A stretch of DNA of 64,000 nt from Mytilus edulis. Taxonomy: Eukaryota. Shown here piece after piece: positions 31,601 through 56,979 of the stretch (its first letter is position 1; each line of letters begins with the position of its first letter). Location of the stretch: assembly GCF_963676685.1 (NCBI RefSeq), contig NC_092345.1:17918001-17982000 (forward strand), read 5' to 3'. The notes below the pieces were generated by a model. It saw only the letters and a program-made list of their open reading frames with translations, ran no database searches and was not told the DNA's origin. A program made the translations under genes and the position numbers.

Positions 31601-31742
31601 NNNNNNNNNNNNNNNNNNNNNNNNNNNNNNNNNNNNNNNNNNNNNNNNNNNNNNNNNNNNNNNNNNNNNNNNNNNNNNNNNNNNNNNNNNNNNNNNNNNN
31701 NNNNNNNNNNNNNNNNNNNNNNNNNNNNNNNNNNNNNNNNNN
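31601..31742. other. Assembly gap (N run)
   Basis: 142 consecutive n bases. Confidence 1.
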
Positions 31743-32760
31743 AATCACAAAATATGTTTAGGTTTTGACATATTGTCGGACTTCACCAATACACAAGTGT
31801 CTTTTATGACAAATGTCTTAAATTTTTTAAAGTGTTAAATGTGAAATGAAGCAGGACAAAGTTTAAGGTATTAGGAAAGCACTGAACCCATGAAGAGGTT
31901 GCTGACCGGGGACAGGCACATAACCTTAGACAGGATTTAGTATTCAACCGTCCTTATTTTGGAATCAAATCAGTGAAGTGATAAAAGAGGGACGAAAGAT
32001 ACCAAAGGGACAGTCAAACTCATAAATCGAAAATAAACTGACACCGCCATGGCTAAAAATGAAAAAGACAAACAGACAAACAATGGTACACATGTCACAA
32101 TATACTTAAAATGGTATACATAAAAAAATAGAAAACCCCCGCTTAACTCGATTGAGACAGCAACATAGACGACAGAAAGTACAAGAAGAGACAATGATGA
32201 TTTTCACACTCTTTTTGCTGGCGCTGTACCTCCTACGTCAAGATGAGCGCGTCAAGATGAGCACAGGAAACTAGATCTTGCACAGTGATTGACTGTTTGA
32301 TGGTTTCTTAACTAACAGTGTCAAATATTTCATGCCGTGATAGTGCAATGCAAACATTTGAGTAAAAAATCAATACAGGGAAGAAGATAACAAACATTAT
32401 ATATATAATGTGCTCTTATTAAAAGAGACAATATATCCTTCATCGCAACCTTCAGAAAAGGACAGTCAAGACGCAACAACTTACAATTCTTATATAACTT
32501 TTGTTATCACTTACGTAAAAATAAGGAAATGCGCTATGATTGTCAATGAGACACTTCACTAGAGTGCAAATGAAGTGGATGTTAGGAATAGTAGGCCATC
32601 GTAAGGCCTTCAATAATGAGAACAAACCCACACTGTATAATCGGCTATAAAAAGGCCCCAACATGTTAAATGAAGAAAGAAACCAAATTGAGAAAACTAA
32701 CGGCCTAATTTATAACAAAACATGTTTAAGAAAAACAAATATGGCATACAATAACCTACG

Positions 32761-33666
32761 AAAACAACTGATTAGTAAACTCTTGTCTATTAAGGCACAA
32801 CAACTGAATAGTAAACTCTTGTCTATTAAGGCAAAACAACTAAATAGTAAACTCTTGTCTATTGAGGCAAAACAACTGAATAGTAAACTCTTGTCTATTA
32901 TGGCAAAACAACTAAATAGTAAACTCTTGTCTATTAAGGCAAAACAACTGAATAGTAAACTCTTGTCTATTAAGGCAAAACAACTGAATAGCAAACTCTT
33001 GTCTATTAAGGCACAACAACTGAATAGTAAACTCTTGTCTTTTAAGGCAAAACAACTGAATAGTAAACTCTTGTCTATTAAGGCAAAACAACTGACTAGT
33101 AAACTCTTGTCTATTAAGTCAAAACAATTGAATAGTAAACTCTTGTCTATTAAGGCAAAACAATTGAATAGTAAACTCTTGTCTATTAAGGCAAAACAAT
33201 TGAATAGTAAAATCTTGTCTATTAAGGCAAAACAACTAAATAGTAAACTTTTGTCTATTAAGGCAAAACAACTGAATAGTAAACTTTTGTCTATTAAGGC
33301 AAAACAACTGAATAGTAAACTCTTGTCTATTAAGGCAAAACAACTGAATAGTAAACTCTTGTCTATTAAGGCAAAACAATTGAATAGTAAACTCTTGTCT
33401 TTTAAGGCAAAACAACTAAATAGTAAACTTTTGTCTATTAAGGCAAAACAACTGAATAGTAAACTCTTGTCTATTAAGGCAAAACAACTGAATAGTAAAC
33501 TCTTGTCTATTAAAGCAAAACAACTGAATAGTAAACTCTTGTCTATTAAAGCAAAACAACTGAATAGTAAACTCTTGTCTATTAAGGCAAAACAACTGAA
33601 TAGTAAACTCTTGTCTATTAAGGCAAAACAATTGAATAGTAAACCCTTGTCTATTAAGGCAAAACA
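32761..33666. repeat. 36-bp minisatellite, ~25 copies
   Basis: AAAACAACTGAATAGTAAACTCTTGTCTATTAAGGC units with point variants and no visible indels. Confidence 0.97.
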
Positions 33667-35096
33667 TTAAAAGAATTTAAAAGACAGTTTTACATTTGTT
33701 TTATCTATTATGATGTTACCATGAACAACTCTGTAAGGGATATTTTTGTTGGAATTGAAATGATATGGCGTGAGTGATTTTCTGTGTGGTTTCTTATAAC
33801 TTCATGTGTAATTAAACGAAAAACGAAAATCAACGTCTTTATATAAGATTTTTACCTACATAACAGATTAATTGAAATGCACTCGATGGGCGTTTAATCT
33901 ATATTATAAAAAAATGCATAGTAATCTAATGAAATTTATAGTGCAATTAGATATACAATTGAAAGAAATAATTTCAACCAGACTAAAGTATGCTAATATA
34001 ATATTGTGAAATAAAAACCTCTTAAAATTGTACCTATTGTCCAACACAATAAGAATTAGATTATCAATTGTGAAATCGTAAAAATTTCTAAACAAATAGA
34101 AAACTATATATACTCGACTAACATAGATAATAAAAAAGGTATTTCCAGTGTTTACCTTTCTACTTTGAGTTTAACCTATATTAGTTTTTGTTTTGCTGAT
34201 AAATAGAAAGTTGATGCAACTAGGCGAAATATTAGAGTTTCCAGTGGCTGTCGGATAACAAATCCGGCCCTTCTGTCCTTGTCATTACTTTTCAATAAGT
34301 AGTCCCATTTAATAGACACTTGTTAGTTGTAATTTTAAATAAACAAAACCGAAACTGAATATTGACACCTGAAGATTGCGGATTAAAAGAAGTTGTCTGG
34401 GTAAATGTTAACGAATTAGCAACCATGCAATATACACATGCTAAGCTGAGTTTTGTGTATTTATTCAACAGTGTCTAGAAGTATAGTATTATTGGTCTAA
34501 CATTGTGTGCTGACAAGAATTCTGCATTAAAATAGGGATAAACATTCATTAACTCGTCGGTCGAATAATTAAAAAAAAAATGTGTCATGTGCTCCTATTT
34601 TTCTATGCGTATAATGTTCAATGAAATAAAAAAAAAAAAGCTGTCCTATATACAAAACTAAAAAAAAAACCTAAATTACTTTGCAGCACTATAGGGACAT
34701 TTCGAAAGGCTATTAAAGAATTAAAGAAATAAATATTGGAAATCATGCAGAAAGTATCCGACAGACGTTGAAAAACAAAAACAAACATGAAGCCAAATCC
34801 AACAAAGAAGTACTTATGCATCGTGAGGATAATATAATAAATTAACTAATTCTACATCACTTTGTATTTTGGATTTGTTATATAATATGATTGTCAAAGT
34901 AAGACGTAACAGCTCGTGCGATTCTGTCAAAAGTCACGTACTGAATATGCGACGTACTTGCGTTTGAGCGGTAAAGACTGTTTGTCAAGGTTAACTGTCT
35001 CTTAACATTCATGCATGGTTTACATTTTTAAAAGCTTCCTACATGTACCATCATTTACTTCTTTAGATGCTATGAATTCATTTGCTGGGCTCGTTT

Positions 35097-42792: not shown

Positions 42793-44463
42793 ACTTATTG
42801 TTAAAAAAGACTAGTACATTATTTTCAAATTAACACATTCTAACTGCATCGTTTCAATCATGTCAAAGTGAAAAGTTACCATGTGATATACATGTAAAAC
42901 CATCAGTGGTGTCATCAAATCGGTGTTTTGATATAAGCTTATGGTACCGATTTCCGCGCGAATAGTGGTTGTTTCTTGGGATAATCTTCATCAAGTACAC
43001 TGGAGGAAACGGTGACATATATGTTAAAAGTTAAGAGTAAAAAACAAACCGGGCCTATATAGAACATTCAAACTTATCTTAATAAAGGCAACAGTAGTAT
43101 ACCGCTATTCGAAAGTCATAAATCGATTGAGAGAAAACAAATCTGGGTTATGGTCTAAAACCGAGGGAAACACATCAACTATAAGAGGACAGAAACACTG
43201 AAGTGCAACAAAAAACAATCGACAATGCAACACACATATAAATGAACTATAAGATTACAACTGCAATTTCCCTGACTTGGAAAAGGAAATCTAAAAAAAA
43301 GATTGGTGGGTTGAACCTAGTTTTGTGCCTAGGCAAACCTCGCGATTTTATGGCAATGTTAAATATAACACTAAAATGACAACATTACATGACAGGAATA
43401 CATTACAAATAAATGCAAGAACATTCAGGACATTTTGGTCATATCATTTCATTCGTCTCTTATTTCGTACTCAGATTACTCCAGTAGCCTGCAGTCATGT
43501 GCTTCCAAGGAATATTGATTCGGTTATAAAATTTGTTTCGGTCTTCCAACTGAGTTGATTTTAGCGCTGCTGGGGAATACTGTGTAGACAACACGCGCGT
43601 CTAGCGTGCTGACGTATTGCCGTACCGGCGTACTCAATTATAAGCCTGGTTTCATTGATGACTTTAACTGTTTAATGTATAAGAGATATTAATAAATTTC
43701 ACCCAACGGTTTTATAAAGATAAGTCAATTAAGTGTGGTTGACTCATAATTTGACTAAATTTCTTCCAATGGTATATAAGATGTTAAAGAAAATGATAAT
43801 CTTAACATAAATATTTTATTTTCGTATTGCATAACTTTGAAATATCAAATGGTTTAATTTATATTAACAAGTACATATTTATAAAACATTATGCTAGGCA
43901 AACATATATAATATAATAGAAAACAATAAGGTAGTCTAGGACTCACAATTCACAAGAACTGTTAACAAATGTCTACTTTCTGTACCTACTATGTACAGAA
44001 AGTTTGACTTGTATATATATAAACATCTTTGTTGAGATTTAACAATAAACCATTCATCTTTGTTTTCCTTTTTATGTCTTACGTACTGTTATTACCCATA
44101 TTACCTAAATAATGCCCCTTAATCGACTTTTCATAATGATTCATTTTAATTTTACAGATCAACCAGCTAGGTTAATAATCAACAGATTTTATTTATAAAA
44201 TTTTGTAATATGGTTAAGAATACAAGTTTTAATCTACTTAAATATTTTGTTGATACTTGAATTGTGTATGTGTTCGATTCATAAACTATCCGCATAACAA
44301 TTTGGATGAGAAAAATATATACGTTATGGTATGTAGCCAACAGTGAATACATATGCAGATGCCACGGTCGTTTGATTTCAATCTTGAAACACCCGTCACA
44401 AAATCTTACTGTTGTAGATCTAGATCTTCAAATTTATTGCAGACATCAATAGAGTTTGGCAAT

Positions 44464-47400
44464 CTACTCAAAACGACTGTATCTATTATTTGTTTCAACG
44501 ACTGCCTCAACAGAAAATGAATATCCTCTTTGATCAGCTGTTAAATTATTACTATTTACTATGTTTTGTGAAACTTGATTGGCTGATGGATGTGCTGGGG
44601 TAAAAATTGTTTGAATATCTGGTGTTTTATTTCCTTGTATTCGTATTGTGGATAGCCGCCCTCTTTTGTAACAAACACCAAGACTTGTTGCTAAAAACCT
44701 GTAAAACATGGAAATTTGAAATAAAAGTATTGCTTAAACTTTGAATTTAAGTGGACACATGCTAGTCAAAATATTTCATAAAACATTTTTCCACAATGCC
44801 ACTATATTAGAGAAAATAGTTAATGACATAGTTTGGATATTTCCTTTAGGATTGATCTTACATTTTCTACATAAGGAAATGCCTGTACCAATCAGGAATA
44901 TGACAGTTGGATTCAATTCGTTTGATGTTTTTGAGCTTTTGATTTTGCCATTTGATTACAGATTTTCCATTATAATTTTTGACACAATGTTGATTGTTGT
45001 ACCACTACTTTTGATATTTTAACCTATATATTATTATTGTTTGTTCACACATCGTTGTCAATATTATTGAATTCTATGTGACTGTCATACAAGTGAGGGG
45101 GTTTGGCTAGCTTTAAGTTTCTAGTTTTTGATTTTGATTTTGCCATTTGATTTGGTACTTTCCGTTTTGAATTTTCCTCGGAGATCGTTTTTTTTTTATT
45201 ATTGTAATTATCACCAAAGTTTTTATTTCCTCTGTTGCTCTTTTTGCTTGTCTACTTGTTTGAGTATATTTGAAGTATATCATTTGTTGCTTAAGGAATC
45301 ACAATGCCTGTATCATGCTATTATAAGTGTTTTCCTCATAGATTGGTTTTTGTATATAAATAAAAGATGATTTTCTACATTATCTTACCTTAAACATCCT
45401 AATTCCACCAAAATACACAAGCCAATTGTCAGAACATCTATGTATGTTGCAGTTGTTACCGAATGAATCAGCGTGTATGCTCCAAATGGACTACCAACCA
45501 TGATAACAAGTGACAAGAAAGTTTGTAACCAATGCCGTGTCTTGATATAACGTGGGACAAACGTCCATGTCTCCTTTAGTTGATACTTGAATGATTATGA
45601 AAAATAATAATAATATTCTAATGGCTTTGGTATAGATAACAGATACTTGATTTTGAAGTTTTATTTATAACCTGCAGATTCCTTACTTTTAACAAACTAG
45701 TTTTAATTGGCCGGTTAGAATTATGATGTTTTATACTCTATATAATGAACATGTATTATACTCTAATATAACGTTCCCATGTGTGCATTGAAATATCCAT
45801 ATAAAGAAAGATAATATATTGCAGGAAATAAGGTTAATCCAGTTAATTTTCATGAAACTAGAACTTATAGTATAAAACAGGTATATACCCACCTGTGATT
45901 GCTAAATACGGCCTAATGTTTAATACGTTTACATTTCACACCCGTGGGTTCATATCCATCAGTATACAACCTTTCATATACTAGTACATTTTTTCAATTA
46001 TATGCTTGTTTCGGAGTTGTTATTATCAACTTTTTTTTTTTTATCAAACTTTGATATTTTTTAAACCCTCCAAATTTACCTGGGCTGTATTTGTCAAACC
46101 TTTTGGAATTTTTGGTCTTCAATGCTCTTCAAGTTTGTACTTTCATTCAGCTTTTAAACCTTTTGATTTGAGCGTCACTTGTGTGTCAAGTGTAGACAAA
46201 ACACGCGTCTGGCGTACTAAATTTGAAGAATGGTATCTATGATGAGTTTAATGTACTTTTAAACGCACTAGCAATGATTTAGTTATCTAAAATGTACTTG
46301 TGTGTGTGTGTGTTCTTTCTACATAAGGAAATGCCTGTACCAAGGTAGGAACATGACAGTTCTTTTCCTCCGTTTGGTGTTTTTGAGCTTCTGGTTTTGC
46401 CTTTTGATAAGGGACTTTCCGCTTGAATTTTCTTGGAGTTCGGTATTTCAGTACTTTTTATAATGTAAGTAAAACCTTTCAAATCGAAGATAAACCAGAT
46501 AATTAATAAATATATTTACTTTATTCTTGCAAACTTTACATCTAAAACCATCTTCATCAGCTGAACACTTAAACAAGAAAAGCACAAATGTAATGTTCTT
46601 ATATTTGTCTTATTTAACATTCTATTATATTGTAAGACCGAATTACTATTTTCTGAAGCAGGAACCTCATATCCTTCACCCCTATATTTGTTTGTATGGA
46701 CTTCATGGTTTCTTTGGTTTCAACATTCAGTGTAGTATAATATCATGTGCTATTTTTCTTTTTTTTTTTAATGTTTGTATTGTTTCTTCTTGAAAACAAA
46801 ATTATTTTTCATTCTGGAAACTCTTGTTTTCATTTCAAACTTACAAAATTCAAGAAAATATTTGAACATGTATTATGTTTATAACACTTATGAGTTTGAC
46901 TGTCCCTCTGGTATTTTTCGTCCATCTTTTGCAGGGGTAGTTATTTGTATCGTCTATCATTTTTATGTAAAAAGTATTTGTTCGAATTTACTGGAAAGAT
47001 CTCGCTATTGAAGGCTTTTTCAATCTTTGTGTAATTTAGGTATCATATTTAAAGGGGCATATCGAATTATTTGCTCGGATATTTATTCCGGTTTAAGATT
47101 TTATAGTTCATCTGTTGTTATAGGTTCAGGTGTGGAAGTAGGATTACCCAATGTAAAAGGGACTAAAATGATACTGACGTCACGTTTGGATATGAAAATA
47201 ATTCAGTTGTTAAAGACTGGCGTTATCACCTGTCGAGACACCATATTTTAAAACTCAGAAAGGAAACGAAACATCTACAATGTTCCATCAGACAGAGTTC
47301 AGATTTCATCGAACTTACATTTGCACCATATATCGTCTGGTTTTTTTGGGGTGTTTTTTTGTGTGTGAATGTGTGTTTTATAGATAAAAATTTTTAAACA

Positions 47401-50400
47401 GAAATATACTAGTTAGAATAAAACGCTCAGAGAAATACCTCCATTAGCCATTTTCGGAGACATTCGTGATGGACTGATGCAACATCCCCTTTACACTGGC
47501 ATGGTTGTATCAAATCCCCAGCATCAATTCGTTCTGGATCATAGCATATCCAACAATCTTGCTTTGTACCTGGTAAATATATCAGGACTTAAAATGAAAT
47601 TCAAATTACACATTTCAGACTGACGGTAATGTTAAATAAACACATTTAAACTTCAAAATTAAAATTCAATTGAAAAAGTATGTATAATATTGATAAATTC
47701 GGTACCATTGATAAATAATTACCATTATCTGTAGATATTGTCCCATAATTTGGATGAACCGTTGGCTCCGTGTTTTCCTCCTGCGTGCAACTGTCAATTT
47801 TCAACGTTTTAAAGAGTTTCTGTGGATTTAGTACCCATAAACTTTCTGGACTGAAATATATAAAAAGAGGAAGTAATATAAAACATGATTTTGTTAATAT
47901 GCTTCCGTCTCCAAAGTACAAACTATTTCCGTCGCTCTTCCTGATGGTTTTAGGAAGTGTTTGGTGTGATGCTTATTTATATATTAGAACAAACACCAAT
48001 AAACTATCAAATCGAAGATAAAAAAAGGAATGCCTTAATGAGAGTTCGTTAATTGCTTTGAATCTGATTGTGTGCCCTTAGATTGATCCAAACTATTTTC
48101 ATCAACCTTACAAAACTTTAGACTTTTCGGGTAACCTATCATTTTTCCAAGATTTCGGCCATATAACTCGCGTGCTTTAAAATACCGGGCCTATGAATAT
48201 GAACTCAAGACCCGCGTTGTAGCTATATATTATGCTTGGAGTAGAACACATAAGTAGTTCGAATCATTTCTATCACAACTGAAGTAGCACAGGAGCTCTG
48301 TCTTTCGAGCATATTTATTGTCTATTAAGGTAATTTTCCAAGTTGATCCATTTAGATATCATTAAAACAAACATTAACACATATTTAGATCGAATTATAG
48401 ACCTTAGAAATGGTGCCTCCAAATCAGGGAACATGGGTTTTTTCTAAGTTTGTAGATATGAAATGTTTAATGTAAAATTGAGAAAGGAAATGGTGAATAT
48501 GTCAAAGCGACAACCACCCGACCATAGAGCAAACAACAGACGAAGGCAACCAATGGGTCTTCAATGTAGCGAGAATTCCCGCACCCGTAGGTGTCCTTCA
48601 GCTGGCCCCTAAAATATGCATAATAGTACAGTGATAATGGACGTCATACTAAACTCCGAATTATACACAAGAAACTAAAATTTAAAATCATACAAGACTA
48701 ACAAAGGCCAGAGGCTCCTGACTTGGGACAGGCGCAAAATTGCGGCGGGGTTAAACATGTTTATGAGATCTCAACCCTCCCCCTATACCTCTAGCCAATG
48801 TAGAAAAGTAAAAGAATAACAATACGCACATTAAAATTCAGTTCAAGAGAAGTCCGAGTCTGATGTCAAAAGATGTAACAAAAGAAAATAAATAAAATGA
48901 CAATAATACATAAATAACAACAGACTACTAGCAAAGTATTCAACCGTCTCAAATTGCAGTCTATGTTTTTTCAGTTGTAAAAACTGTCTAAGGATAAAAA
49001 CTGTTGATTACAATGCATCTTGACAGATTGCCAGTATTGCCAGTAATATATAGAAATGATAAAAATTATGATTCACATAATTCCTTTTTTGTATTATATC
49101 CATAAAGCATATATTAAATCAAACATTCACAACCAGAAACAAAAACATTGTGAGAAATCAAAACCGACCCTTTTCAAAATAAAAACTGTCAAAAATGCAA
49201 ATGTCTCTCTACTCCGGAGAAAACTTGTCAACTCAGTTTTAGTTGAATTGTATCATACTTATTAAAATCTACAGTATTATACTAAATTCAATCCCTATCA
49301 TGTTATTCAATGCAAAAAATGTGAAAGTATTAAAATTCAAATAGTATGGGAACAATATCGAATTCATACGGAATAAAAGAAGGCACTTAAAATAGAAAGC
49401 ATCGTTTAAATCATCACGTGATCAAAAATTATTGTCACAAGGAAATTAATAAATTCACAAATATGTAACTTTAAGGAATCAGGTATTTTTTTTAAAACAT
49501 ACCTTTTGCAGTTCCAAAGGACACAAGGAAACCATAAAACAACACCAAATTCGGCAATTCTGAATCCAATGTCATAAAAGTTTTGGTCAAATACTGGAAG
49601 GCTGAAATGAATACCGAAAAGTTGAAGTCTAACATATCAATAGTTTGTATGTTTGAGCATTTAATTTTGACAGTTAATAAGGACATCTCCAATTAGAATT
49701 TTCCTTGGAGATTGGTATTTTGTTATTTTTGTTCTTGTAATTCTTTCGAAATAATATGTCTCTGATTTTTTTATTTTCCTTCTTTCAATCCAAACTAATG
49801 CACATCAATACAGATTGAGTTTTTTTTTCATCTGATTGTAAAGATAATTCTAAGAACTTATCAGCTCATTTATTTTAGTATTTTACAGACGCACATTTAA
49901 AAATCAAATGTTACCAGTAACACCGTTTGAGAAAAGGGACAGGTATGCCAGTAAATAAAAAAATCTATTTGACACTGATCTACGATTGTTTCAAACAAAT
50001 TGAATGTCATTAATTGATGAATAGCTCTTCGACAGCAATATTTGTTTTAATTTGTCTCATGAGAATAGTATGTAGCTAAAGCAGTGCATTTACAGGCGCG
50101 TTTTGTCATATGGTATTAAAGAAAATTGGTCCGGATAGCAACAAAACCAGGTTCAACCTCCGTTTCTTACTTACAATGTCCTATACCAAATCAGAAATAT
50201 GGCCGTTGTTATCTTACAGCTCGTTTCTTAGGAGCTTACACTGTCGGTTTTTTTTTTGCACTTCAGTGTCTCTGTTGTGTCGCTGATTTCTTCTTAAAGT
50301 TGATGTGTTTCTCTCGGTTTTAGTTTGCAACCCCAATTGGTTTTCTCACAATCGATTCATTACTTTTGAACAGCGATATACTACGGTTGCCTACGGAGGA

Positions 50401-53400
50401 TCAATGATCTAATTTTAAAATTTGTTGAAATACAAATGGTGTTATGTTTGAAGATATCAGAATATTTCATAAAAAGCACAAAGCATACGACTAAAACGCA
50501 AACATCTCATTTTATGCTTCCTGATACATTTTATTACTTGTACTTGCATGCTATAATAGACTTAACTAGTTGAACTAAAAAATAACCATGTGAAAGATAT
50601 GACAGAGGTGTACCTTTTCTTCCAATTATCTCTCAAAGCATCCGATATGAGAAACAGAGCAGTTAGTAGTTGGAGACATGCTTGTGCTATCAAACCCAGT
50701 CTAGACATATGTAACTGCCAAGGATCCACATTACTTTGGGTTTTATTAAAAGCCCCTCGCACCTGTATTAGAAAGATAACGATAAATGCAAAGAATAAGA
50801 ATTATGAATCTTGTTTCATGACATTCTTTACGGCTTTAACTTAATTTTAATTTGAAATGATTAAATTTCACAAGGTTTCAAAACTGTGGAAAAATAGTTG
50901 TTTCACTTGGAGACTTTTACTTTTATTTACCACCAATAATGTGGCTGAATAATATGGAATACACTCTCGTTTGTCTGTATATACTTTTATGTTTGTGCTA
51001 TGTGGTGTCCTTTGTTGTTTTCCTTTGTTTGTACGTTTATTATTGGCTGGTGTTGTCTGTCGGAATTCTGTGGTAGTTCCTGTTATCTTTTAATGTAATA
51101 TTTCTTTAAAAAAATATAACACACTTTATTTTAAAGATCATGTGGTTTTTTTTCGAAATCATAAGTGTTGCAACAATTAATGCATGTGAACTTTTTTTCT
51201 ATTTTTGATTATTTCGATGGATCTTTAGTTTATTTTTCCATATTTTAGAAGACAAATATCCTACAGATACAGAATCTCCATTGATATTCATATCCATGCT
51301 TTTCATAAGACTGTATTTACACGCCGTTGAAATATCCATAGTGACACAATGAGATATAGTTCATTTTACGAATTTCAGCATTATCATAAAAACGGATAAA
51401 ACTAAAAACTGTGAATAGATTATGTCATTTATGATCTACATACTAAATACTGTTGTTTATTTTCATATTTCTATAATTTATATGTCAAGGTTTTTGTATA
51501 TTTATACATCCGTGGCTTTCTTAAATTTGAATTTGTGCGTTCCTGATGGAGGTAAATCCGGAAAATCGCTTTGGACGCAAGGACTTTTAAAGTGTTGTTT
51601 GGAAAGTATTTTTTTCAATTATTTTTTAATGAGTATATTTACAGCAAGAAATTTAATTGATTAAATCCTAAAGCAATAACAAATTAATGCAAAATATCCT
51701 TCCAGAATGTCTTAAATATATTCGAGTGAAAAGGGAAGTAATCTTAAGTATCACTCGACACTTAAAGAAAAAAATGTTCAATGATATAAATATATATATA
51801 TATAAGCGGAAATAGAAATTACCTTAAAGTATACTTCAACTCCGTATACTAAGAAAAATACAACAGCAATTATGAGCAACAAACCAACGCTGCCATTACA
51901 AATTCTGTATATATTATTCTATAAAGAAGAAATGAATGCTATGTTACTATTAATATATAACGACTTTTTTATTTAGTATGTTTAAAGATCTCTTTGTTTT
52001 GTCAATACTTAGATGTGTTTTCAATACTTAAATTTTACAAAGGTTTATATGTAACATATAAAATAAACATTATTTCAGACCTTGCCGACCTTAATTTTGA
52101 AGTTTGTAAATGTTTCTTTTAATTTTGTCACATTTTTTCCTTGTGTTGTTTGTAGTAAATTACGCAGCATAGACGTCGGTTGTTTCATGCGCCTCTTGTT
52201 CTAAACACGATAATATTCATTTGTTCCATTACTGTTCAAGTCTATTCATTCAATTAACGACCTTAACAGAGAGACCAAGGAATTACAACCTCTATACATC
52301 CATCTACTTGATTATGTTACTTTTACTTTGATGCAAGACAAACTAAAATAAGTATGACACCATGTATCAGTCATGCATATTATTCGTGTTGCTTAGTCTT
52401 TAGTTTTCTATGTTGTGTCTTGTGTACTATTGTTTGTCTGTTTGTCTTTTTCCTTTTTAGCTATGGTTTTGCCAGTTTATTTTCGATCTATGATTTTGAA
52501 TATCCCTCTGGTATCTTTCGCCCCTCTTTTTCTCTGTAATTTCATATTGCATCAGTCAGAATTTTCTATATTTATTCCTCTCTTTCGCTTTATATTTAAT
52601 ATACTTACAGAAATGACAGGGTCATCTATATCTGTAGCGACGAGCTGAGTGATTAGTAATCCTGATATGACGACATTAATTACAACAAATCCTATTATAG
52701 ATTTACTAAGGAATCTTGGTTTATCACAGTCAATTCCCTCCAAATGAAATGCCTGAGACAAAATACAACATAGTTTAACAATCTTTAAAATAGGAGAGAA
52801 AGTATGAAAACTAAAGTATGCTTATACTTAGCGTTATGTTTAAAAATAAATGTTTTGCAATTCTTTTTGTAGATACTATACACTATCAACTATACCCTTT
52901 TGTGAATGCAATTTTATGCAGATAAAAGCAATGTTTTTCTCAGGCAACAGAAGAGCTTTTGCCCTGAATGTTCTGCGTAAGAGTATATTGTGTGAATCCT
53001 TAAATTATACTCATATCTTCAGAACAGTGTGATGTATAAACGACACCATAAGTGTATCTCTTTATTTATATATAGGAAAAAACGATACGTTTAGATTTTG
53101 TTTCATATTTTACATTTCGTTCCGATCCTTTTAGATGAAATCAAGCTGGTTTCTGCTTATCATATTGCATCTTGATTAAATATGAATTTTTCTTTCTTAC
53201 ATGATAACTAATAAGAAATAATTTGTTTTTGGTTCTGTTTAATTACCTCTGCCCAGAAACATACTATTAAAGATGAACCTGATAACAATATAGGATAGTA
53301 AGCACTCCACAGGTGTATTGAGGCTTGATCCGATATGTGCATCTGAAAAAATATATATCAATTGAATTAACTAGATATTATGATGTACACAATTATCCAT

Positions 53401-56003
53401 CAATGACTTCGTAATAAGCATCGTGCAAAAGTTACTTGGAAATTCGAACTAGTAAAAACAAAATGTCATTTATGTCATTCCAGATTTAAAATTACGCACC
53501 GTAAGTTTTTATTATTTTGAGACAATTCAACACATTTCTACACAAAAAAGTGAACTGCCTATGATTTGATATTAAAATCACGTTGTAATCGGAGGGACAA
53601 AGAAACGAAGAAGCATTTTTTGTATGAGGCAAATGTTGCAACACATTATTGAGATATACAATGCATATATGTACAATATATTTAGATTCAATCAATTATT
53701 AATTTTCTTTTGCAGTATATGTTCTTTAACAATATTGCCATCGACTAAATAAAGTATACTGTACTTCTTAACTGTTTTATAGACATCTCCTACATACCTT
53801 TGTAAAGAAATAAACACCTCTGATAGCTGTAGCAAAGATCGTCAATATGTACAACAGTTTAGGACCTGTTATTTTGAAAACTGTTTTCCAAGACTTCGTC
53901 TTTTGCTTTTGATATTCATTGCTTATACATAAAAACTGAAATAAAGCAAACATAGACAATCAAATATTTTCTAATTTTGTGAATTGATGTTTGCTTTGTT
54001 TTGTCTCTTTAGTATCATTTCGAAATCTATCAATTGTTTGTAGATAACATGGTTGTTAGAAAAATAGTAACAACAAAATAAATGAAAAGAGCAGAAAAAA
54101 ACAGTGGAGGACTAAAACACTATATAGATAGTTTGGAGAGATTGAAAAGGTAATGAAAGAGGGACGCCTCCGGGTGCGGGAATTTCTCGCTACATTGAAG
54201 ACCTGTTGGTGACCCTCTGCTGTTGTTTTTTATTTGGTCGGGTTGTTGTCTCTTTGACACATTCCCCATTTCCATTCTCAATTTTAATGAAAGAACATCT
54301 TTGCCGAAGTCAAACCGGGTTCTCGGTTTTGGAAGATATATCAGTCCTTTTTATCTATAACTTCGTGTTGTGCTTTTGAAAATGAAATCATTCGTTTTAC
54401 TTTGGTATTGTCTGCTTTTATTATACTTTTCGAATATCCTCTGTGTATCTTCTTCTATCTCTTTTCGTTAGACTGCATTATGTAACATTAAGTCGGAAAA
54501 CAAATCTATTTGGAATGAAAATTATAACATAAAGTTTGTTAATGCCTAGATACAACCATGAAATGTTGATATTCAACATTCATTAACATAATGTAAAATT
54601 ATTAAACATACCAGTTGAACAAAGGCTACTAGACATAGAAAAACAAATATTGTACCAAACGCCATAAAATATCCGAGGTTTGCATCTTGGCATGAACCAC
54701 CAGTAAACTGGATCTGAAATTCCAATATTGATGATATTATAAATTGAACTGTGATGTAATTCTAGTTAATAAAGATTGCAAAGTCACTTAGGGTTTCCAT
54801 TATGTATCAAATTGTGTAGTGCATACGTTTGTACTTGATCAAGGCTTCTTACTGTTTTGCTTTGAGTCTCACTGACGAGTCATATGTAGACGAACAATGC
54901 GTTTGGCGTTCTTATCTTTAAGTCTACTCTTAAAAAAGCATATCTCGTTCAGTCTATACATAAAGGTTGGTATATAAAAGAGTAGTTCGAGTAAGAGTAA
55001 GTCAACACCACCTTAAAATTATATTGTGTATGTTCTTTGAACATTTCAATGAGTATGCAACAATCTTCTCTGGATAAGATAGGGACATCATCTGTTTATT
55101 TTATTTTCTTCCATCATGGTTAATAGTAAATTAATTATGACATTATTAGTAAACCAATTTTTATTTGAAACCGTTATTTCGATCTGAAAAAGCTCTGAAA
55201 GGATTGTTCAGTTGTTGTTTTTTTTCTGTACATAAACATATAATGCTAAATCATATGAGAATATATTTTAACAGTACAGGATTGACTACAAGCGAAAAGA
55301 CTTCAACGACACTGACTTTACTGTAGAGTATAAATTAATTAAACTAAGGCGTCCGTGTCGTCTACAATAAAACCAGTGACGCTCGAATCATAAAATTTAA
55401 ATAATCAGAATAAAGTAAGAAGTTGATCAGGATACACCAGAAAATTGACGGAAAGAGAGAACAAGACTGATAAATTTATTGTTCATACTTTTCTGATGAT
55501 TTTAAGATCAAAATGACGATTTATAACTTAAATTCATTCACAAATGTAGACACTTGCCACTACAAATTGATCACCTTTGATAATTTAAAAAAAAATCCAA
55601 CCAGAGATTGTATTAGAAATTCTCCGAAATATTATAAACCTGTAAATTTATAAGTCTCTTTAATACAGTAAAAAATTGATATCTGCAAAAGTAGGTTCAA
55701 TGTTTCGTTTTCGTTGTGTGTAATATTGTAGGCTTTTCACACCGACCAATTCGGTCATTTGCATGTCATTACAAAGTCGAGATGTTTTAAAAATAATGAC
55801 TTGGTTTATACATTTGTATAGGTTTACTTGAAGCAATGGGATAATGTCATACATACCAAACATATACATTGACCATCTTGACAAAATCCATTCCCTGAGC
55901 AATTTTTATGAACACATATATCGTCTTCCATAGATTCAGTTAATCCAAGAGCATATTTAGCATAAGCGGTGACTGCCATTTTAAAAGAAACCGTTGATGT
56001 CAT
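44464..56003 (-). CDS. Multi-pass membrane protein: EGF-like module, 7-TM (THH1/TOM1/TOM3 / GPR137-like) bundle, RING-CH (RINGv) E3 finger and 2 TM; 569 aa
   Basis: Thirteen coding exons: 56003-55857, 54713-54612, 53935-53798, 53342-53247, 52752-52609, 51918-51823, 50762-50614, 49601-49503, 47850-47723, 47569-47439, 46567-46520, 45585-45389 and 44698-44464. They total 1710 nt with GT-AG introns, consistent phases and no internal stop. EGF: CVHKNCSGNGFCQDGQCICLIQFTGGSC. RING-CH: CWIC..PCQCKG...VHHECLRKWL...CKVC. Seven hydrophobic segments precede the RING and two follow it. Confidence 0.9.
51536..51579 (+). ncRNA. Second-family hammerhead-like motif, degenerate
   Basis: TGCGTTC-CTGATGG-AGGTAAATCCG-GAAA-ATCGCT-TT-GGACGCA. 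The stem I arms pair and CUGAUGR and GAAA boxes are present, but core A9 is replaced by G. Confidence 0.4.
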
Positions 56004-56979
56004 TATCAAATACTGATATATCCAAGTCTGTTTGTATTAAATTCTATTGTATACCATACGCAACAACAAATATCCATGAATGTATCTGAAAGGAAAAATA
56101 AAATGTTTTCTTTTCAAATCCATGTAAAAAGAAAGTTATGACCAACCGAATTAGACTATTTACCGGATTTGGTATCACATAAGCAACAAGGACGGGTGCC
56201 ACATGTGGAGCAGGATCTGCTTACCTTTCCGGAGCACTTGAGATCACCCCTAGTTTTTGGTGGGGTTCGTGTTGTTTATTTTTTAGTTTTCTATGTTGTG
56301 TCATGTCTGCTGTTGTCTGTTTGTCTTTTTCATTTTTAGCCATGGCGTTGTCAGTTTATTTTAGATTTATGAGTTTGACTGTCCCTTTGGTATCTTTCGT
56401 CCCTCTTTTATTACAAAATATGATGATCAAGTTCATACAGTTTCAAACATTTAGGCGGTTATTTCGAAATAGAATAAATAGATTGTTAATTCACGTGTTT
56501 CGGGTTTAATGAGATAGCTGTTTTTGGTAATCGAGTACCCTGTTTCTGTATTGATCCTCTTTTCTCGGATGATGAAAGTTTTTAACGACCTTGACTGACT
56601 ACACAGCCCTCGCACGGTTTCTCAAATATTCCTGTACGAGAAACAGTTGTACCAACCTTGTCTCAATTAAAAAAGTAAGGTACAGATCAGCCAAACTAAT
56701 TTAACGAACTTTTATCATATCTTATACTCAAAAATATTAAATGTTCAAGTCAGTATTCTAAATTTTATTTTGTTTTTTGTCCATGGATTTATGAGTTTTG
56801 AACAGCGGTATACTACTGTTGCCTTTATTTACTTTAAATTTGGTAAATCAATTTGGTTTCTTTATACCTTCAGCTATAAAAATCTTAACACATACAAATT
56901 TTCAAAACAAATAACAAATTAATAACAAAAAAAATGTATTGATAATTTGATGTAAGTAATAAGAATGTAATAAACTTAC

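What the first reader, a model, noticed from the sequence alone, without database searches (positions are those of the whole stretch)
44464..56003. Receptor-like ubiquitin ligase: EGF + TOM1/GPR137-like 7-TM bundle fused to a MARCH-type RING-CH-2TM module
Seen: 13 small exons, only fragmentarily visible in the ORF track, splice into a stop-free 569-aa frame. It has a short six-cysteine EGF at the N-terminus and seven TM segments (GYFMAFGTIFVFLCLVAFVQLFLCI; LLYILTIFATAIRGVYFF; LWSAYYPILLSGSSLIVCFWAE; IIGFVVINVVISGLLITQLV; VGLLLIIAVVFFLVYGVEVYF; LGLIAQACLQLLTALFLI; IGFRIAEFGVVLWFPCVLW). These are followed by a complete C4HC3 RING-CH with its conserved Trp and two more TMs. Known: RING-CH followed by two TMs is the MARCH/viral K3-K5 E3 core, normally with the RING near the N-terminus. 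The FWAE and FLxYG motifs recall the plant THH1/TOM1/TOM3 7-TM family (from memory, not a search). Inference: an N-out 7-TM topology puts the EGF outside or luminal and the RING in the cytosol. The protein could then sense a ligand or membrane substrate and ubiquitinate directly. I know of no characterised protein with this architecture, though uncharacterised invertebrate homologs may exist.
Basis: partly seen in the sequence, partly recalled or inferred. Interest (0 to 1): 0.85.

Follow-up and report, generated by a model that had tools for sequence, protein, structure and literature searches.

The report
Mussel GPCR-fold/RING-CH fusion ubiquitin ligase gene
This is a real 13-exon mussel gene for a nine-pass membrane protein that joins an EGF module and a GPCR-shaped seven-helix domain to a MARCH-type ubiquitin-ligase module; it belongs to an old animal gene family, found from corals to amphioxus, that is in the databases but that nobody has studied.

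Summary
On the minus strand, 13 exons (56003 to 44464, all GT..AG) splice into a 1710-nt frame of 569 aa. That protein is letter-for-letter identical to RefSeq XP_071154625.1, 'uncharacterized protein [Mytilus edulis]'. A spliced RNA contig joins the last 7-TM exon through the linker exon to the RING exons, so the two halves are one transcript.

What was tested:
- RINGv scores 46 bits, with all C4HC3 ligands and the conserved Trp present.
- The EGF has six Cys in the standard spacing.
- Hydropathy and an AlphaFold model give nine helices.
- Residues 37-336 superpose on solved GPCRs at Z 17.7.
- PF06454 (THH1/TOM1/TOM3) does not hit the mussel protein itself. It passes Pfam's cut-off in 5 of the 6 orthologues scanned singly (27-38 bits against 25).

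About 480 homologues share the whole architecture (Cnidaria, Mollusca, Arthropoda including insects, Priapulida, Ambulacraria, amphioxus). Their tree follows the phyla. All are annotated as uncharacterised, and six literature searches found no description.

Most likely it is a polytopic MARCH-type E3 with a cytosolic RING. The strongly conserved cytosolic face of its 7-TM domain probably docks a partner or regulator. Ligand sensing is untested. I rate it a new variant of a known kind, of moderate to high interest.

The parts
55857..56003 (-). Exon 1 (aa 1-49): start ATG at 56003, poorly conserved N-terminus without a signal-peptide-like stretch, and the first five Cys of the EGF
   Evidence: model identical to P0150; weak EGF hits on this exon; Cys positions; no hydrophobic N-terminus in 72 of 74 homologues
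54612..54713 (-). Exon 2 (aa 50-83): sixth EGF Cys and TM1
53798..53935 (-). Exon 3 (aa 84-129): basic cytosolic loop 1 (6 K+R) and TM2
53247..53342 (-). Exon 4 (aa 130-161): TM3, ending in the invariant C-F-W-A-E motif at the cytosolic end
52609..52752 (-). Exon 5 (aa 162-209): cytosolic loop 2 and TM4 (invariant N187)
51823..51918 (-). Exon 6 (aa 210-241): outer loop 2 (with an NGS sequon) and TM5 with the invariant L-x-Y-G
50614..50762 (-). Exon 7 (aa 242-291): cytosolic loop 3 and TM6 (invariant S-R-x-G at its cytosolic start)
   Evidence: (this exon alone retrieved the full-length homologues)
49503..49601 (-). Exon 8 (aa 291-324): TM7 (invariant R305, E308, W314, C317, W320)
   Evidence: RNA joint 49503|47850
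47723..47850 (-). Exon 9 (aa 324-367): invariant post-TM7 motif (S-P-E-x-L-W-x-L-N-P) and the start of the variable, disordered linker. This is the exon that ties the two halves together.
   Evidence: RNA contig record 6 covers it and both of its joints; only one frame is open through it; conservation 0.74 for residues 320-338; pLDDT under 50 for 325-371
47439..47569 (-). Exon 10 (aa 367-410): RING-CH ligands C372, C375, C390, C392, H400, C403, and W407
   Evidence: Pfam RINGv E 7.3e-14 on this exon alone; RNA joints on both sides
46520..46567 (-). Exon 11 (aa 411-426): the last Cys pair of the RING-CH (C420, C423)
   Evidence: RNA joints 47439|46567 and 46520|45585
45389..45585 (-). Exon 12 (aa 427-492): the TM8-TM9 hairpin that follows the RING, as in MARCH proteins
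   Evidence: RNA contig record 1
44464..44698 (-). Exon 13 (aa 492-569): variable cytosolic tail and TAG stop (44466-44464)
   Evidence: RNA contig record 1 runs through it to 44450

Best explanation
The locus is one single-copy gene for a nine-pass membrane protein. It belongs to an orthologue family that predates the split of cnidarians and bilaterians.

Shown:
- One spliced mRNA encodes, in order, a six-Cys EGF, a seven-helix domain with the GPCR fold, an invariant juxtamembrane motif, a variable disordered linker of about 30-45 residues, a complete C4HC3 RING-CH and a two-helix hairpin.
- The seven-helix domain is related at family level to the THH1/TOM1/TOM3 domain.

Inferred topology: the EGF is luminal or extracellular. 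The RING, all the basic loops and the tail are cytosolic.

Inferred mechanism: the RING-CH recruits a ubiquitin-charged E2. It ubiquitinates cytosolic lysines of membrane proteins that associate laterally with its transmembrane helices, as MARCH, K3 and K5 ligases do, and so sends them to endosomal or lysosomal sorting. The 7-TM domain is not a passive anchor. Its cytosolic half and the motif right after TM7 are the most conserved parts of the whole protein, more so than the RING. That face most likely docks a conserved cytosolic partner or the RING/E2 itself, setting where and when the ligase acts. By analogy with TOM1 (tonoplast, co-purifies with ARL8) and GPR137 (lysosome), an endolysosomal location is the best guess.
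For: Gene and transcript:
- 13 GT..AG exons give 569 aa, identical to P0150.
- RNA contigs bridge E8-E9-E10-E11 and E11-E12-E13.
- Logan contigs of 2.3-2.5 kb encode the full 569 aa (P0153, P0154). Because the gene spans 11.5 kb, these contigs must be spliced.
- The gene is single-copy in its own genome.

Domains:
- RINGv scores 46.4 bits against a cut-off of 21.6.
- A profile of the family hits the RING-CH structures of c-MIR/MARCH8, Doa10 and K3, and the reelin EGF.
- The ligand spacing is intact.

7-TM domain:
- The model has pLDDT of about 90 here.
- VIA-align gives Z 17.7, rmsd 4.4 A over 251 residues to GPR6, and all 50 top rows are GPCRs.
- PF06454 scores 27-38 bits in orthologues.

Topology: K+R counts are 6, 3, at least 3, 17 and 8 in the inferred inner segments, against 3, 1, 1, 3 and 0 in the outer ones.

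Conservation: mean column identity is 0.83-0.86 for the inner halves of TM3, TM5 and TM7 and 0.75 for TM6. It is 0.74 for the post-TM7 motif, 0.69 for the RING, 0.27 for the linker and about 0.3 for outer loops 1 and 2.

Age: about 480 homologues all carry the architecture. Arthropoda, Mollusca and Cnidaria each form one clade at 100% SH-aLRT.

MARCH precedent: the usual layout is a RING-CH followed by two TM helices, and the TM helices take part in target choice (PMC4897099).
Against: - No experiment exists on any member. Ligase activity, substrates, location and topology are all inferred.
- The mussel protein itself does not reach PF06454.
- There is no signal peptide, so N-out insertion relies on TM1 acting as a reverse signal anchor.
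- Three raw-read RNA runs showed no depth on the exons. Expression is therefore low or restricted, and the RNA support for E8-E13 comes from contigs of one run.
- The test of whether the two halves pack together gave no verdict.
- The analogy to ARL8 and Rag partners rests on distant relatives.
Confidence: 0.7

Rival explanations
1. Self-regulating scaffold. The 7-TM domain is the working part, an endolysosomal platform like GPR137 or TOM1. The tethered RING-CH acts mainly in cis, ubiquitinating its own loops or tail to set the protein's turnover or sorting, rather than choosing outside substrates.
For: - MARCH ligases do act on 7-TM receptors in trans; MARCH2 acts on the beta2-adrenergic receptor (PMC3514787, title and abstract).
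- MARCH1 auto-ubiquitinates (PMC4897099).
- The 7-TM cytosolic face is more conserved than the RING.
- The flexible linker would let the RING reach its own loops. The nearly invariant K241 and the invariant K109 lie there.
Against: The TM8-TM9 hairpin, which in MARCH proteins serves target choice, is retained in every member scanned. A built-in degron would not need a full RING-2TM module kept since before the cnidarian-bilaterian split.
Confidence: 0.15
2. True signalling receptor. The EGF and 7-TM part binds an outside or luminal ligand, and its conformational change switches the RING on or off. This would make it a one-component receptor-ligase.
For: - GPCR fold.
- Conserved EGF (mean column identity 0.63) and outer loop 3 (0.61).
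- Invariant or nearly invariant polar residues inside helices: N187, Q268, R305, E308.
- An invariant motif directly links TM7 to the RING arm.
Against: - Outer helix halves and outer loops 1 and 2 are the least conserved parts of the domain.
- Neither the class A DRY nor the NPxxY motif is present (sequence).
- No relative (TOM1, THH1, GPR137) has a known ligand.
- The linker is disordered and variable, which suits allosteric coupling poorly.
Confidence: 0.1
3. Two adjacent genes wrongly joined: a 7-TM/EGF gene and a separate MARCH-like gene.
For: An older M. galloprovincialis annotation lists two proteins of 318 and 310 aa for this locus (P0148, P0152). Three RNA runs gave no reads on the exons.
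Against: - A spliced RNA contig of 1439 nt crosses E8|E9|E10|E11.
- The RING exons E9 and E10 hold no start codon in frame, and no stop follows TM7.
- Current RefSeq models in four Mytilus species are 569 aa.
- Every full-length homologue retrieved with a 7-TM exon alone carries RINGv.
Confidence: 0.03
4. Inactive RING: the domain is kept as a zinc-binding interaction module and has no ligase activity.
For: No activity has been measured. The RING sits after seven helices instead of at the N-terminus.
Against: Six of the eight zinc ligands and W407 are invariant in 79 sequences; C420 and C423 are nearly invariant (at least 90%). P389 before the C-x-C pair is also nearly invariant.
Confidence: 0.02

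Closest known systems
MARCH1/8-type ligases and viral K3/K5/MIR (RING-CH followed by two TM helices)
   Same: C4HC3 RING-CH with the conserved Trp, directly followed by a TM hairpin and a cytosolic tail. The family profile hits the solved RING-CH of c-MIR/MARCH8 (E 1.9e-8) and K3 (E 6.8e-6).
   Different: In those proteins the RING is near the N-terminus and the protein has two TM helices (PMC4897099). Here the module starts at residue 372, after an EGF and a seven-helix domain.
Doa10 / MARCH6 (polytopic RING-CH ligase)
   Same: A RING-CH ligase with many TM helices. The RING matches at E 1.1e-7.
   Different: Doa10 has an N-terminal RING and up to 14 helices that are not a GPCR fold. It has no EGF. 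No similarity outside the RING was found.
THH1/TOM1/TOM3 domain proteins of plants (PF06454)
   Same: Seven helices. PF06454 matches profile positions of about 19-190 in orthologues above the gathering score. TOM1 is a seven-pass membrane protein that co-purifies with the small GTPase ARL8 (PMC3234234, abstract).
   Different: The plant proteins are stand-alone 7-TM proteins with no EGF and no RING. The mussel protein itself is too diverged to hit the model.
GPR137 family (lysosomal 7-TM proteins)
   Same: Orphan 7-TM proteins. The Atlas feature search gives a weak lead of 0.82.
   Different: [quoted passage not shown] PF27607 gave no hit here. Kinship is not shown.
Receptor-like single-pass RING ligases (RNF43/ZNRF3, Goliath/GRAIL), from general knowledge
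   Same: An ectodomain outside and a RING inside, so the ligase could in principle be steered from outside.
   Different: Those have one TM helix, a PA or similar ectodomain and a RING-H2, not a RING-CH. There is no homology beyond the RING superfamily, and this comparison was not tested here.
MARCH2 acting on the beta2-adrenergic receptor
   Same: A RING-CH ligase working on a GPCR-fold protein in the same membrane (PMC3514787).
   Different: That pair consists of two separate proteins. Here both are one polypeptide.

Membership tests
RING-CH / RINGv (PF12906), the MARCH catalytic domain | Pfam model matched above the gathering score | tested here: met
   46.4 bits against 21.6 on P0150. 52.1 bits on exon 10 alone. 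37 of 37 aligned homologues match.
RING-CH / RINGv (PF12906), the MARCH catalytic domain | C4HC3 ligands in the spacing C-x2-C-x(10-45)-C-x-C-x7-H-x2-C-x(11-25)-C-x2-C, with a conserved Trp after the His-Cys pair | tested here: met
   C372, C375, C390, C392, H400, C403, C420, C423 and W407. Six ligands and W407 are invariant and C420/C423 nearly invariant in 79 sequences.
MARCH-type membrane ligases | TM hairpin directly after the RING-CH | tested here: met
   Hydrophobic segments 448-466 and 477-495. Helices 442-468 and 473-508 at pLDDT 82-94.
MARCH-type membrane ligases | RING-CH at or near the N-terminus | tested here: not met
   The RING starts at residue 372 of 569, after the EGF and seven helices. 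The usual layout is described in PMC4897099.
MARCH-type membrane ligases | E2-dependent ubiquitin ligase activity | not testable with these tools
   Needs a biochemical assay.
THH1/TOM1/TOM3 domain (PF06454) | Pfam model matched above the gathering score in this protein | tested here: not met
   No PF06454 row for P0150 even at E <= 10, and none for the single exons.
THH1/TOM1/TOM3 domain (PF06454) | Pfam model matched above the gathering score in clear orthologues | tested here: met
   27.0, 27.3, 32.0, 35.6 and 37.7 bits against 25 in P0062, P0089, P0127, P0075 and P0110; 24.7 bits in P0050. 4 of 37 aligned members match at E <= 0.01. Many precomputed PF06454 labels appear.
THH1/TOM1/TOM3 domain (PF06454) | Seven TM helices | tested here: met
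GPR137 family (PF27607 GPR137_N) | Pfam model matched | tested here: not met
   No hit at E <= 10 on P0150 or at E <= 1 on six orthologues. The only link is an Atlas lead of 0.82, which is under the tool's own 0.9 mark.
EGF-like domain | Six Cys in the spacing C-x4-C-x5-C-x4-C-x-C-x8-C, and a model match | tested here: met
   Cys at 30, 35, 41, 46, 48 and 57. EGF_Teneurin scores 23.3 bits on P0150, just under the 24.3 cut-off, and 25.3 and 27.3 bits in two orthologues. The family profile hits the reelin EGF at E 1.4e-8. The model shows two short strands at pLDDT 78-90.
G-protein-coupled receptors (class A) | Seven-helix fold with the same helix order | tested here: met
   Z 17.7, rmsd 4.4 A over 251 residues to GPR6 (8tyw_A). 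All 50 listed rows are GPCRs or a designed GPCR-like fold. Foldseek alone gave only E 4e-3.
G-protein-coupled receptors (class A) | Sequence family match (7tm_1) and the DRY and NPxxY switch motifs | tested here: not met
   No 7tm Pfam hit at E <= 10. TM3 ends in C-F-W-A-E and TM7 in W-F-P-C-V-L-W.

The most novel reading that the evidence does not exclude
The family is a one-component receptor-ligase. The EGF and GPCR-fold domain senses a luminal or extracellular ligand, or a membrane lipid. Through the invariant cytosolic face and the post-TM7 motif, it gates the tethered RING-CH. This would be a direct 'signal in, ubiquitin out' device that arose before the cnidarian-bilaterian split and that may be missing from vertebrates.
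Probability: 0.15. Interest if true: 0.85.

Novelty: new variant of a known kind. Interest (0 to 1): 0.6.

Why it matters
MARCH-type ligases and GPCR-fold proteins are both heavily studied. A covalent fusion of the two, kept as a single-copy gene from corals to amphioxus, has not been described in the literature I could search. Its best-conserved surface is the cytosolic face of the 7-TM domain, where GPCRs talk to their partners. It therefore offers a natural case for asking how a seven-helix domain can steer a ubiquitin ligase. It may also show what the enigmatic THH1/TOM1/TOM3 fold does in animals. Orthologues exist in tractable species (Nematostella, Nasonia, oysters), so the question can be tested now. 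No vertebrate appeared among the best 120 hits of an amphioxus query, which may explain why the family was overlooked.

Tried and rejected
- Exon-by-exon Pfam scans of the 7-TM exons found nothing. The exons are too short.
- The joined translation was never sent to a search tool. It was built only inside scripts. The identical database protein P0150 then served as its reference.
I could therefore not read the Logan contigs behind P0153 and P0154, nor check the E1-E8 joints on them.
- Raw-read RNA runs X21, X22 and X24 gave zero depth on all exons laid. Only intronic repeats were covered.
- The search of earlier findings returned nothing for this place.
- PF06454 searched exon-wise in the own genome gave only sub-threshold matches elsewhere (22.9 and 19.2 bits).
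- Foldseek against the PDB gave no match at E <= 0.001. VIA-align was needed.
- Complex prediction of the 7-TM part (58-340) against the RING-2TM part (366-512) gave no verdict (score 0.00). This is no evidence either way.
- The Atlas search of the 7-TM part gave only leads under 0.9: PRRT3, TOM1 and GPR137_N.
- Plant TOM1 or animal GPR137 sequences could not be fetched with the tools on hand, so no profile-profile comparison was run.
- Neighbouring ORFs in the window gave no context.
- The first attempt at the splice script failed on an intron-reading slip and was corrected.

Full report
THE GENE

I first searched exon by exon, by reference. The exon at 47430-47588 alone matches Pfam RINGv at E 7.3e-14. 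The first exon gives weak EGF hits. The single 7-TM exons give nothing.

With exon 7 alone as the query, a full HMMER scan of 1.84 billion representatives returned 31 proteins. Seven of them were about full length (500-599 aa), and one of 377 aa covered the C-terminal part; all eight carry RINGv downstream of the matched helix. One homologue, P0045 from Mytilus trossulus (569 aa), aligns to the window in 12 collinear tblastn pieces that cover all 13 exons.

A script then chose GT/AG sites under the constraint of an open frame. It gave 13 exons, 1710 nt and 569 aa plus TAG. The coordinates are listed under parts.

I did not send this joined translation to any search tool. Its 90% cluster contains P0150, which is XP_071154625.1, 'uncharacterized protein [Mytilus edulis]'. 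P0150 is identical to the joined translation at every residue, and I used it as the reference from then on. The window is therefore from M. edulis or something indistinguishable from it at this gene. The gene is single-copy in its assembly.

ARE THE TWO HALVES ONE TRANSCRIPT?

I laid reads on 44450-50440.

- Contigs of an RNA run (X1) carry the joints 49503|47850, 47725|47571 and 47439|46567 on one 1439-nt contig, at depth 31.
- A second contig of 1104 nt carries 46520|45585 and 45387|44696 and runs on to 44450.
- Four of the joints have CT..AC ends on the plus strand, which is GT..AG on the gene's strand.
- The joint 47725|47571 is reported with non-canonical ends. The joined letters are the same as those of the canonical 47723|47569 junction if base 47724 differs in that animal. 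That difference would change Asn366 to Lys. This is my inference from the sequence.

So TM7, the linker exon and the RING exons are spliced together in RNA. Other facts agree:

- Only one frame is open through the linker exon.
- The RING exons E9 and E10 hold no in-frame start, and no stop follows TM7.
- Two Logan contigs of 2.3 and 2.5 kb encode the whole 569 aa (P0153, P0154). For an 11.5-kb gene these must be spliced RNA.

Two cautions apply. Three raw-read RNA runs of the same species label showed no reads on the exons at the depth sampled, so expression is low or restricted. An older M. galloprovincialis annotation split the locus into two proteins.

THE DOMAINS

EGF. The Cys lie at 30, 35, 41, 46, 48 and 57, in the classical spacing. 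EGF_Teneurin scores 23.3 bits, just under its cut-off, in the mussel protein. It is over the cut-off in orthologues. The family profile hits the reelin EGF at E 1.4e-8.

RING-CH. All eight ligands and W407 are present. RINGv scores 46.4 bits. The profile hits the solved RING-CH domains of c-MIR/MARCH8, Doa10 and K3.

Membrane part. There are nine hydrophobic segments. An AlphaFold model built on 79 homologues has mean pLDDT 75, about 90 in the seven-helix part. It shows helices 62-93, 107-128, 134-164, 176-200, 206-246, 255-283 and 294-319. A disordered stretch follows at 325-371, then the RING, then helices 442-468 and 473-508.

Fold. Foldseek found only weak GPCR matches (E 4e-3). The exhaustive VIA-align search put residues 37-336 on class A GPCRs at Z 17.7 (rmsd 4.4 A over 251 residues, GPR6). 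All 50 rows were GPCRs or a designed GPCR-like fold. That is above the tool's own caution mark of about 13 for helical bundles.

WHICH 7-TM FAMILY?

- PF06454 (THH1/TOM1/TOM3) gives no hit on the mussel protein, even at E <= 10.
- It passes its 25-bit gathering score in five of six orthologues scanned singly (27.0 to 37.7 bits, profile positions about 19-190 of 273).
- It matches 4 of 37 aligned members at E <= 0.01.
- It is precomputed for many others.

These proteins are unmistakable orthologues of the mussel one (E below 1e-120).

The GPR137 half of the label does not stand. GPR137_N was never hit. The language-model search gave only sub-threshold leads to PRRT3, TOM1 and GPR137_N, at 0.82-0.83.

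TOPOLOGY (INFERRED)

Basic residues pile up in the segments after TM1 (6), TM3 (3), TM5, TM7 (17, holding the RING) and TM9 (8). The N-terminal 68 residues and the other loops have 0-3.

The six-Cys EGF needs an oxidising compartment. Both points give an N-out, RING-in arrangement, which is the only one in which the RING can meet an E2.

There is no signal-peptide-like stretch in 72 of 74 homologues. TM1 must therefore act as a reverse signal anchor, as in many GPCRs (general knowledge).

DISTRIBUTION AND AGE

Two word-indexed searches each found about 480 homologues. Those scanned directly show the same layout. The groups are:

- anthozoan cnidarians, including Nematostella;
- cephalopods, gastropods and bivalves;
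- crustaceans, chelicerates and insects (Nasonia, Ischnura, sawflies, a thrips, a mayfly, a cricket);
- a priapulid;
- echinoderms and hemichordates;
- amphioxus.

Their names are 'uncharacterized protein', 'RING-CH-type domain-containing protein', or evident mislabels ('MARCH5', 'MIR2', 'von Hippel-Lindau...').

With amphioxus as the query, no vertebrate appeared among the best 120 (all at 475 bits or more). This is suggestive of loss, not proof.

A quick maximum-likelihood tree of 57 named members recovers Arthropoda, Mollusca and Cnidaria each as one clade at 100% SH-aLRT. Ambulacraria form a clade at 97%. The careful search was not finished, and amphioxus and the priapulid sit on long branches. 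The pattern is that of vertical descent of one gene since before the cnidarian-bilaterian split.

WHERE SELECTION ACTS

Mean column identity over 79 sequences:

| Part | Identity |
|---|---|
| Cytosolic halves of TM3, TM5 and TM7 | 0.83-0.86 |
| Cytosolic half of TM6 | 0.75 |
| Nineteen residues after TM7 (320-338) | 0.74 |
| RING | 0.69 |
| EGF | 0.63 |
| Mean of the outer helix halves | 0.58 |
| Outer loops 1 and 2 | about 0.3 |
| Linker | 0.27 |
| Tail | 0.18 |

The invariant residues lie mostly on or next to the inferred cytosolic face. They are K109, C157/W159/A160/E161/H164, F175/L176/S179, Y234/G235, S261/R262/G264, W314/C317/W320 and P325/L328/W329/L331/N332/P333. That is the surface a GPCR uses for its partners.

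I read this as a conserved docking site, either for a cytosolic protein or for the protein's own RING/E2 arm. An attempt to test packing of the two halves gave no verdict.

MECHANISM

The best-supported reading is a polytopic MARCH-type E3. MARCH, K3 and K5 ligases use a cytosolic RING-CH and choose targets partly through their TM helices (PMC4897099). This protein keeps that whole module and adds a GPCR-fold domain.

The nearest stand-alone relatives sit on vacuolar or lysosomal membranes and work with small GTPases. TOM1 co-purifies with ARL8 (PMC3234234). GPR137 acts at the lysosome. I therefore guess an endolysosomal site and a partner-dependent control. These last steps are analogy only.

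The rivals are self-regulation in cis, true ligand gating, a mis-joined pair of genes and an inactive RING. They are weighed in their own sections.

NOVELTY

Six literature searches found no paper on this architecture. A 2025 survey of GPCR families treats GPR137 as having no extra domains and mentions THH1/TOM1/TOM3 only in passing.

The gene models are public, so the sequence is not new. What is new is recognising a conserved, unstudied class: a MARCH-type ligase built onto a GPCR-fold THH1/TOM1/TOM3-like domain with an EGF cap. I rate it a new variant of a known kind, with interest 0.6.

Noticed in passing
window 48450-49050 (intron 8), with an inverted partial copy at 54179-54286 (intron 2): A repeat inside the gene's introns is covered at depth of up to about 340 on both strands in three RNA runs, with many variant letters and loose ends. 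This indicates a multi-copy, transcribed interspersed element and not part of the gene.
   Followed up: partly
window 44919-44979, 45114-45174, 46371-46431, 49641-49701; and 46888-46930, 52488-52530, 56367-56409: Two families of short interspersed repeats are scattered through the introns and just upstream of the gene. The stretches 44850-45250 and 46850-47050 also draw RNA reads that run on into unlike sequence.
   Followed up: partly
window 47724: The RNA contig reads as if this base differs from the window, which would change Asn366 to Lys in the variable linker. The reads tool shifted the joint by two bases instead of listing a difference. This is an inferred polymorphism.
   Followed up: partly
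Mytilus galloprovincialis records VDI21428.1 and VDI21429.1 (P0148, P0152): An older annotation of the orthologous locus splits the gene into two predicted proteins of 318 and 310 aa. Newer RefSeq models in four Mytilus species give 569 aa.
   Followed up: partly
window 32663-33670 (+): A 335-aa open frame matches DUF7486 (E 2.9e-13), a family of unknown function. It is unrelated to the finding.
   Followed up: no
window 31601-31742: A run of 142 N (assembly gap or masked stretch), left untouched.
   Followed up: no
G000:C3:67754164-67754436 (locus L001): An open 156-aa frame elsewhere in the same genome gives a sub-threshold PF06454 match (22.9 bits, profile positions 24-112). It may be an exon of a stand-alone THH1/TOM1-like gene.
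   Followed up: no
Homologues P0058, P0073, P0076, P0094, P0108 and others (crustaceans): Several crustacean isoforms are 700-800 aa long, and their best local alignment covers only about half of the query. This suggests a lineage-specific insertion or alternative exons.
   Followed up: no
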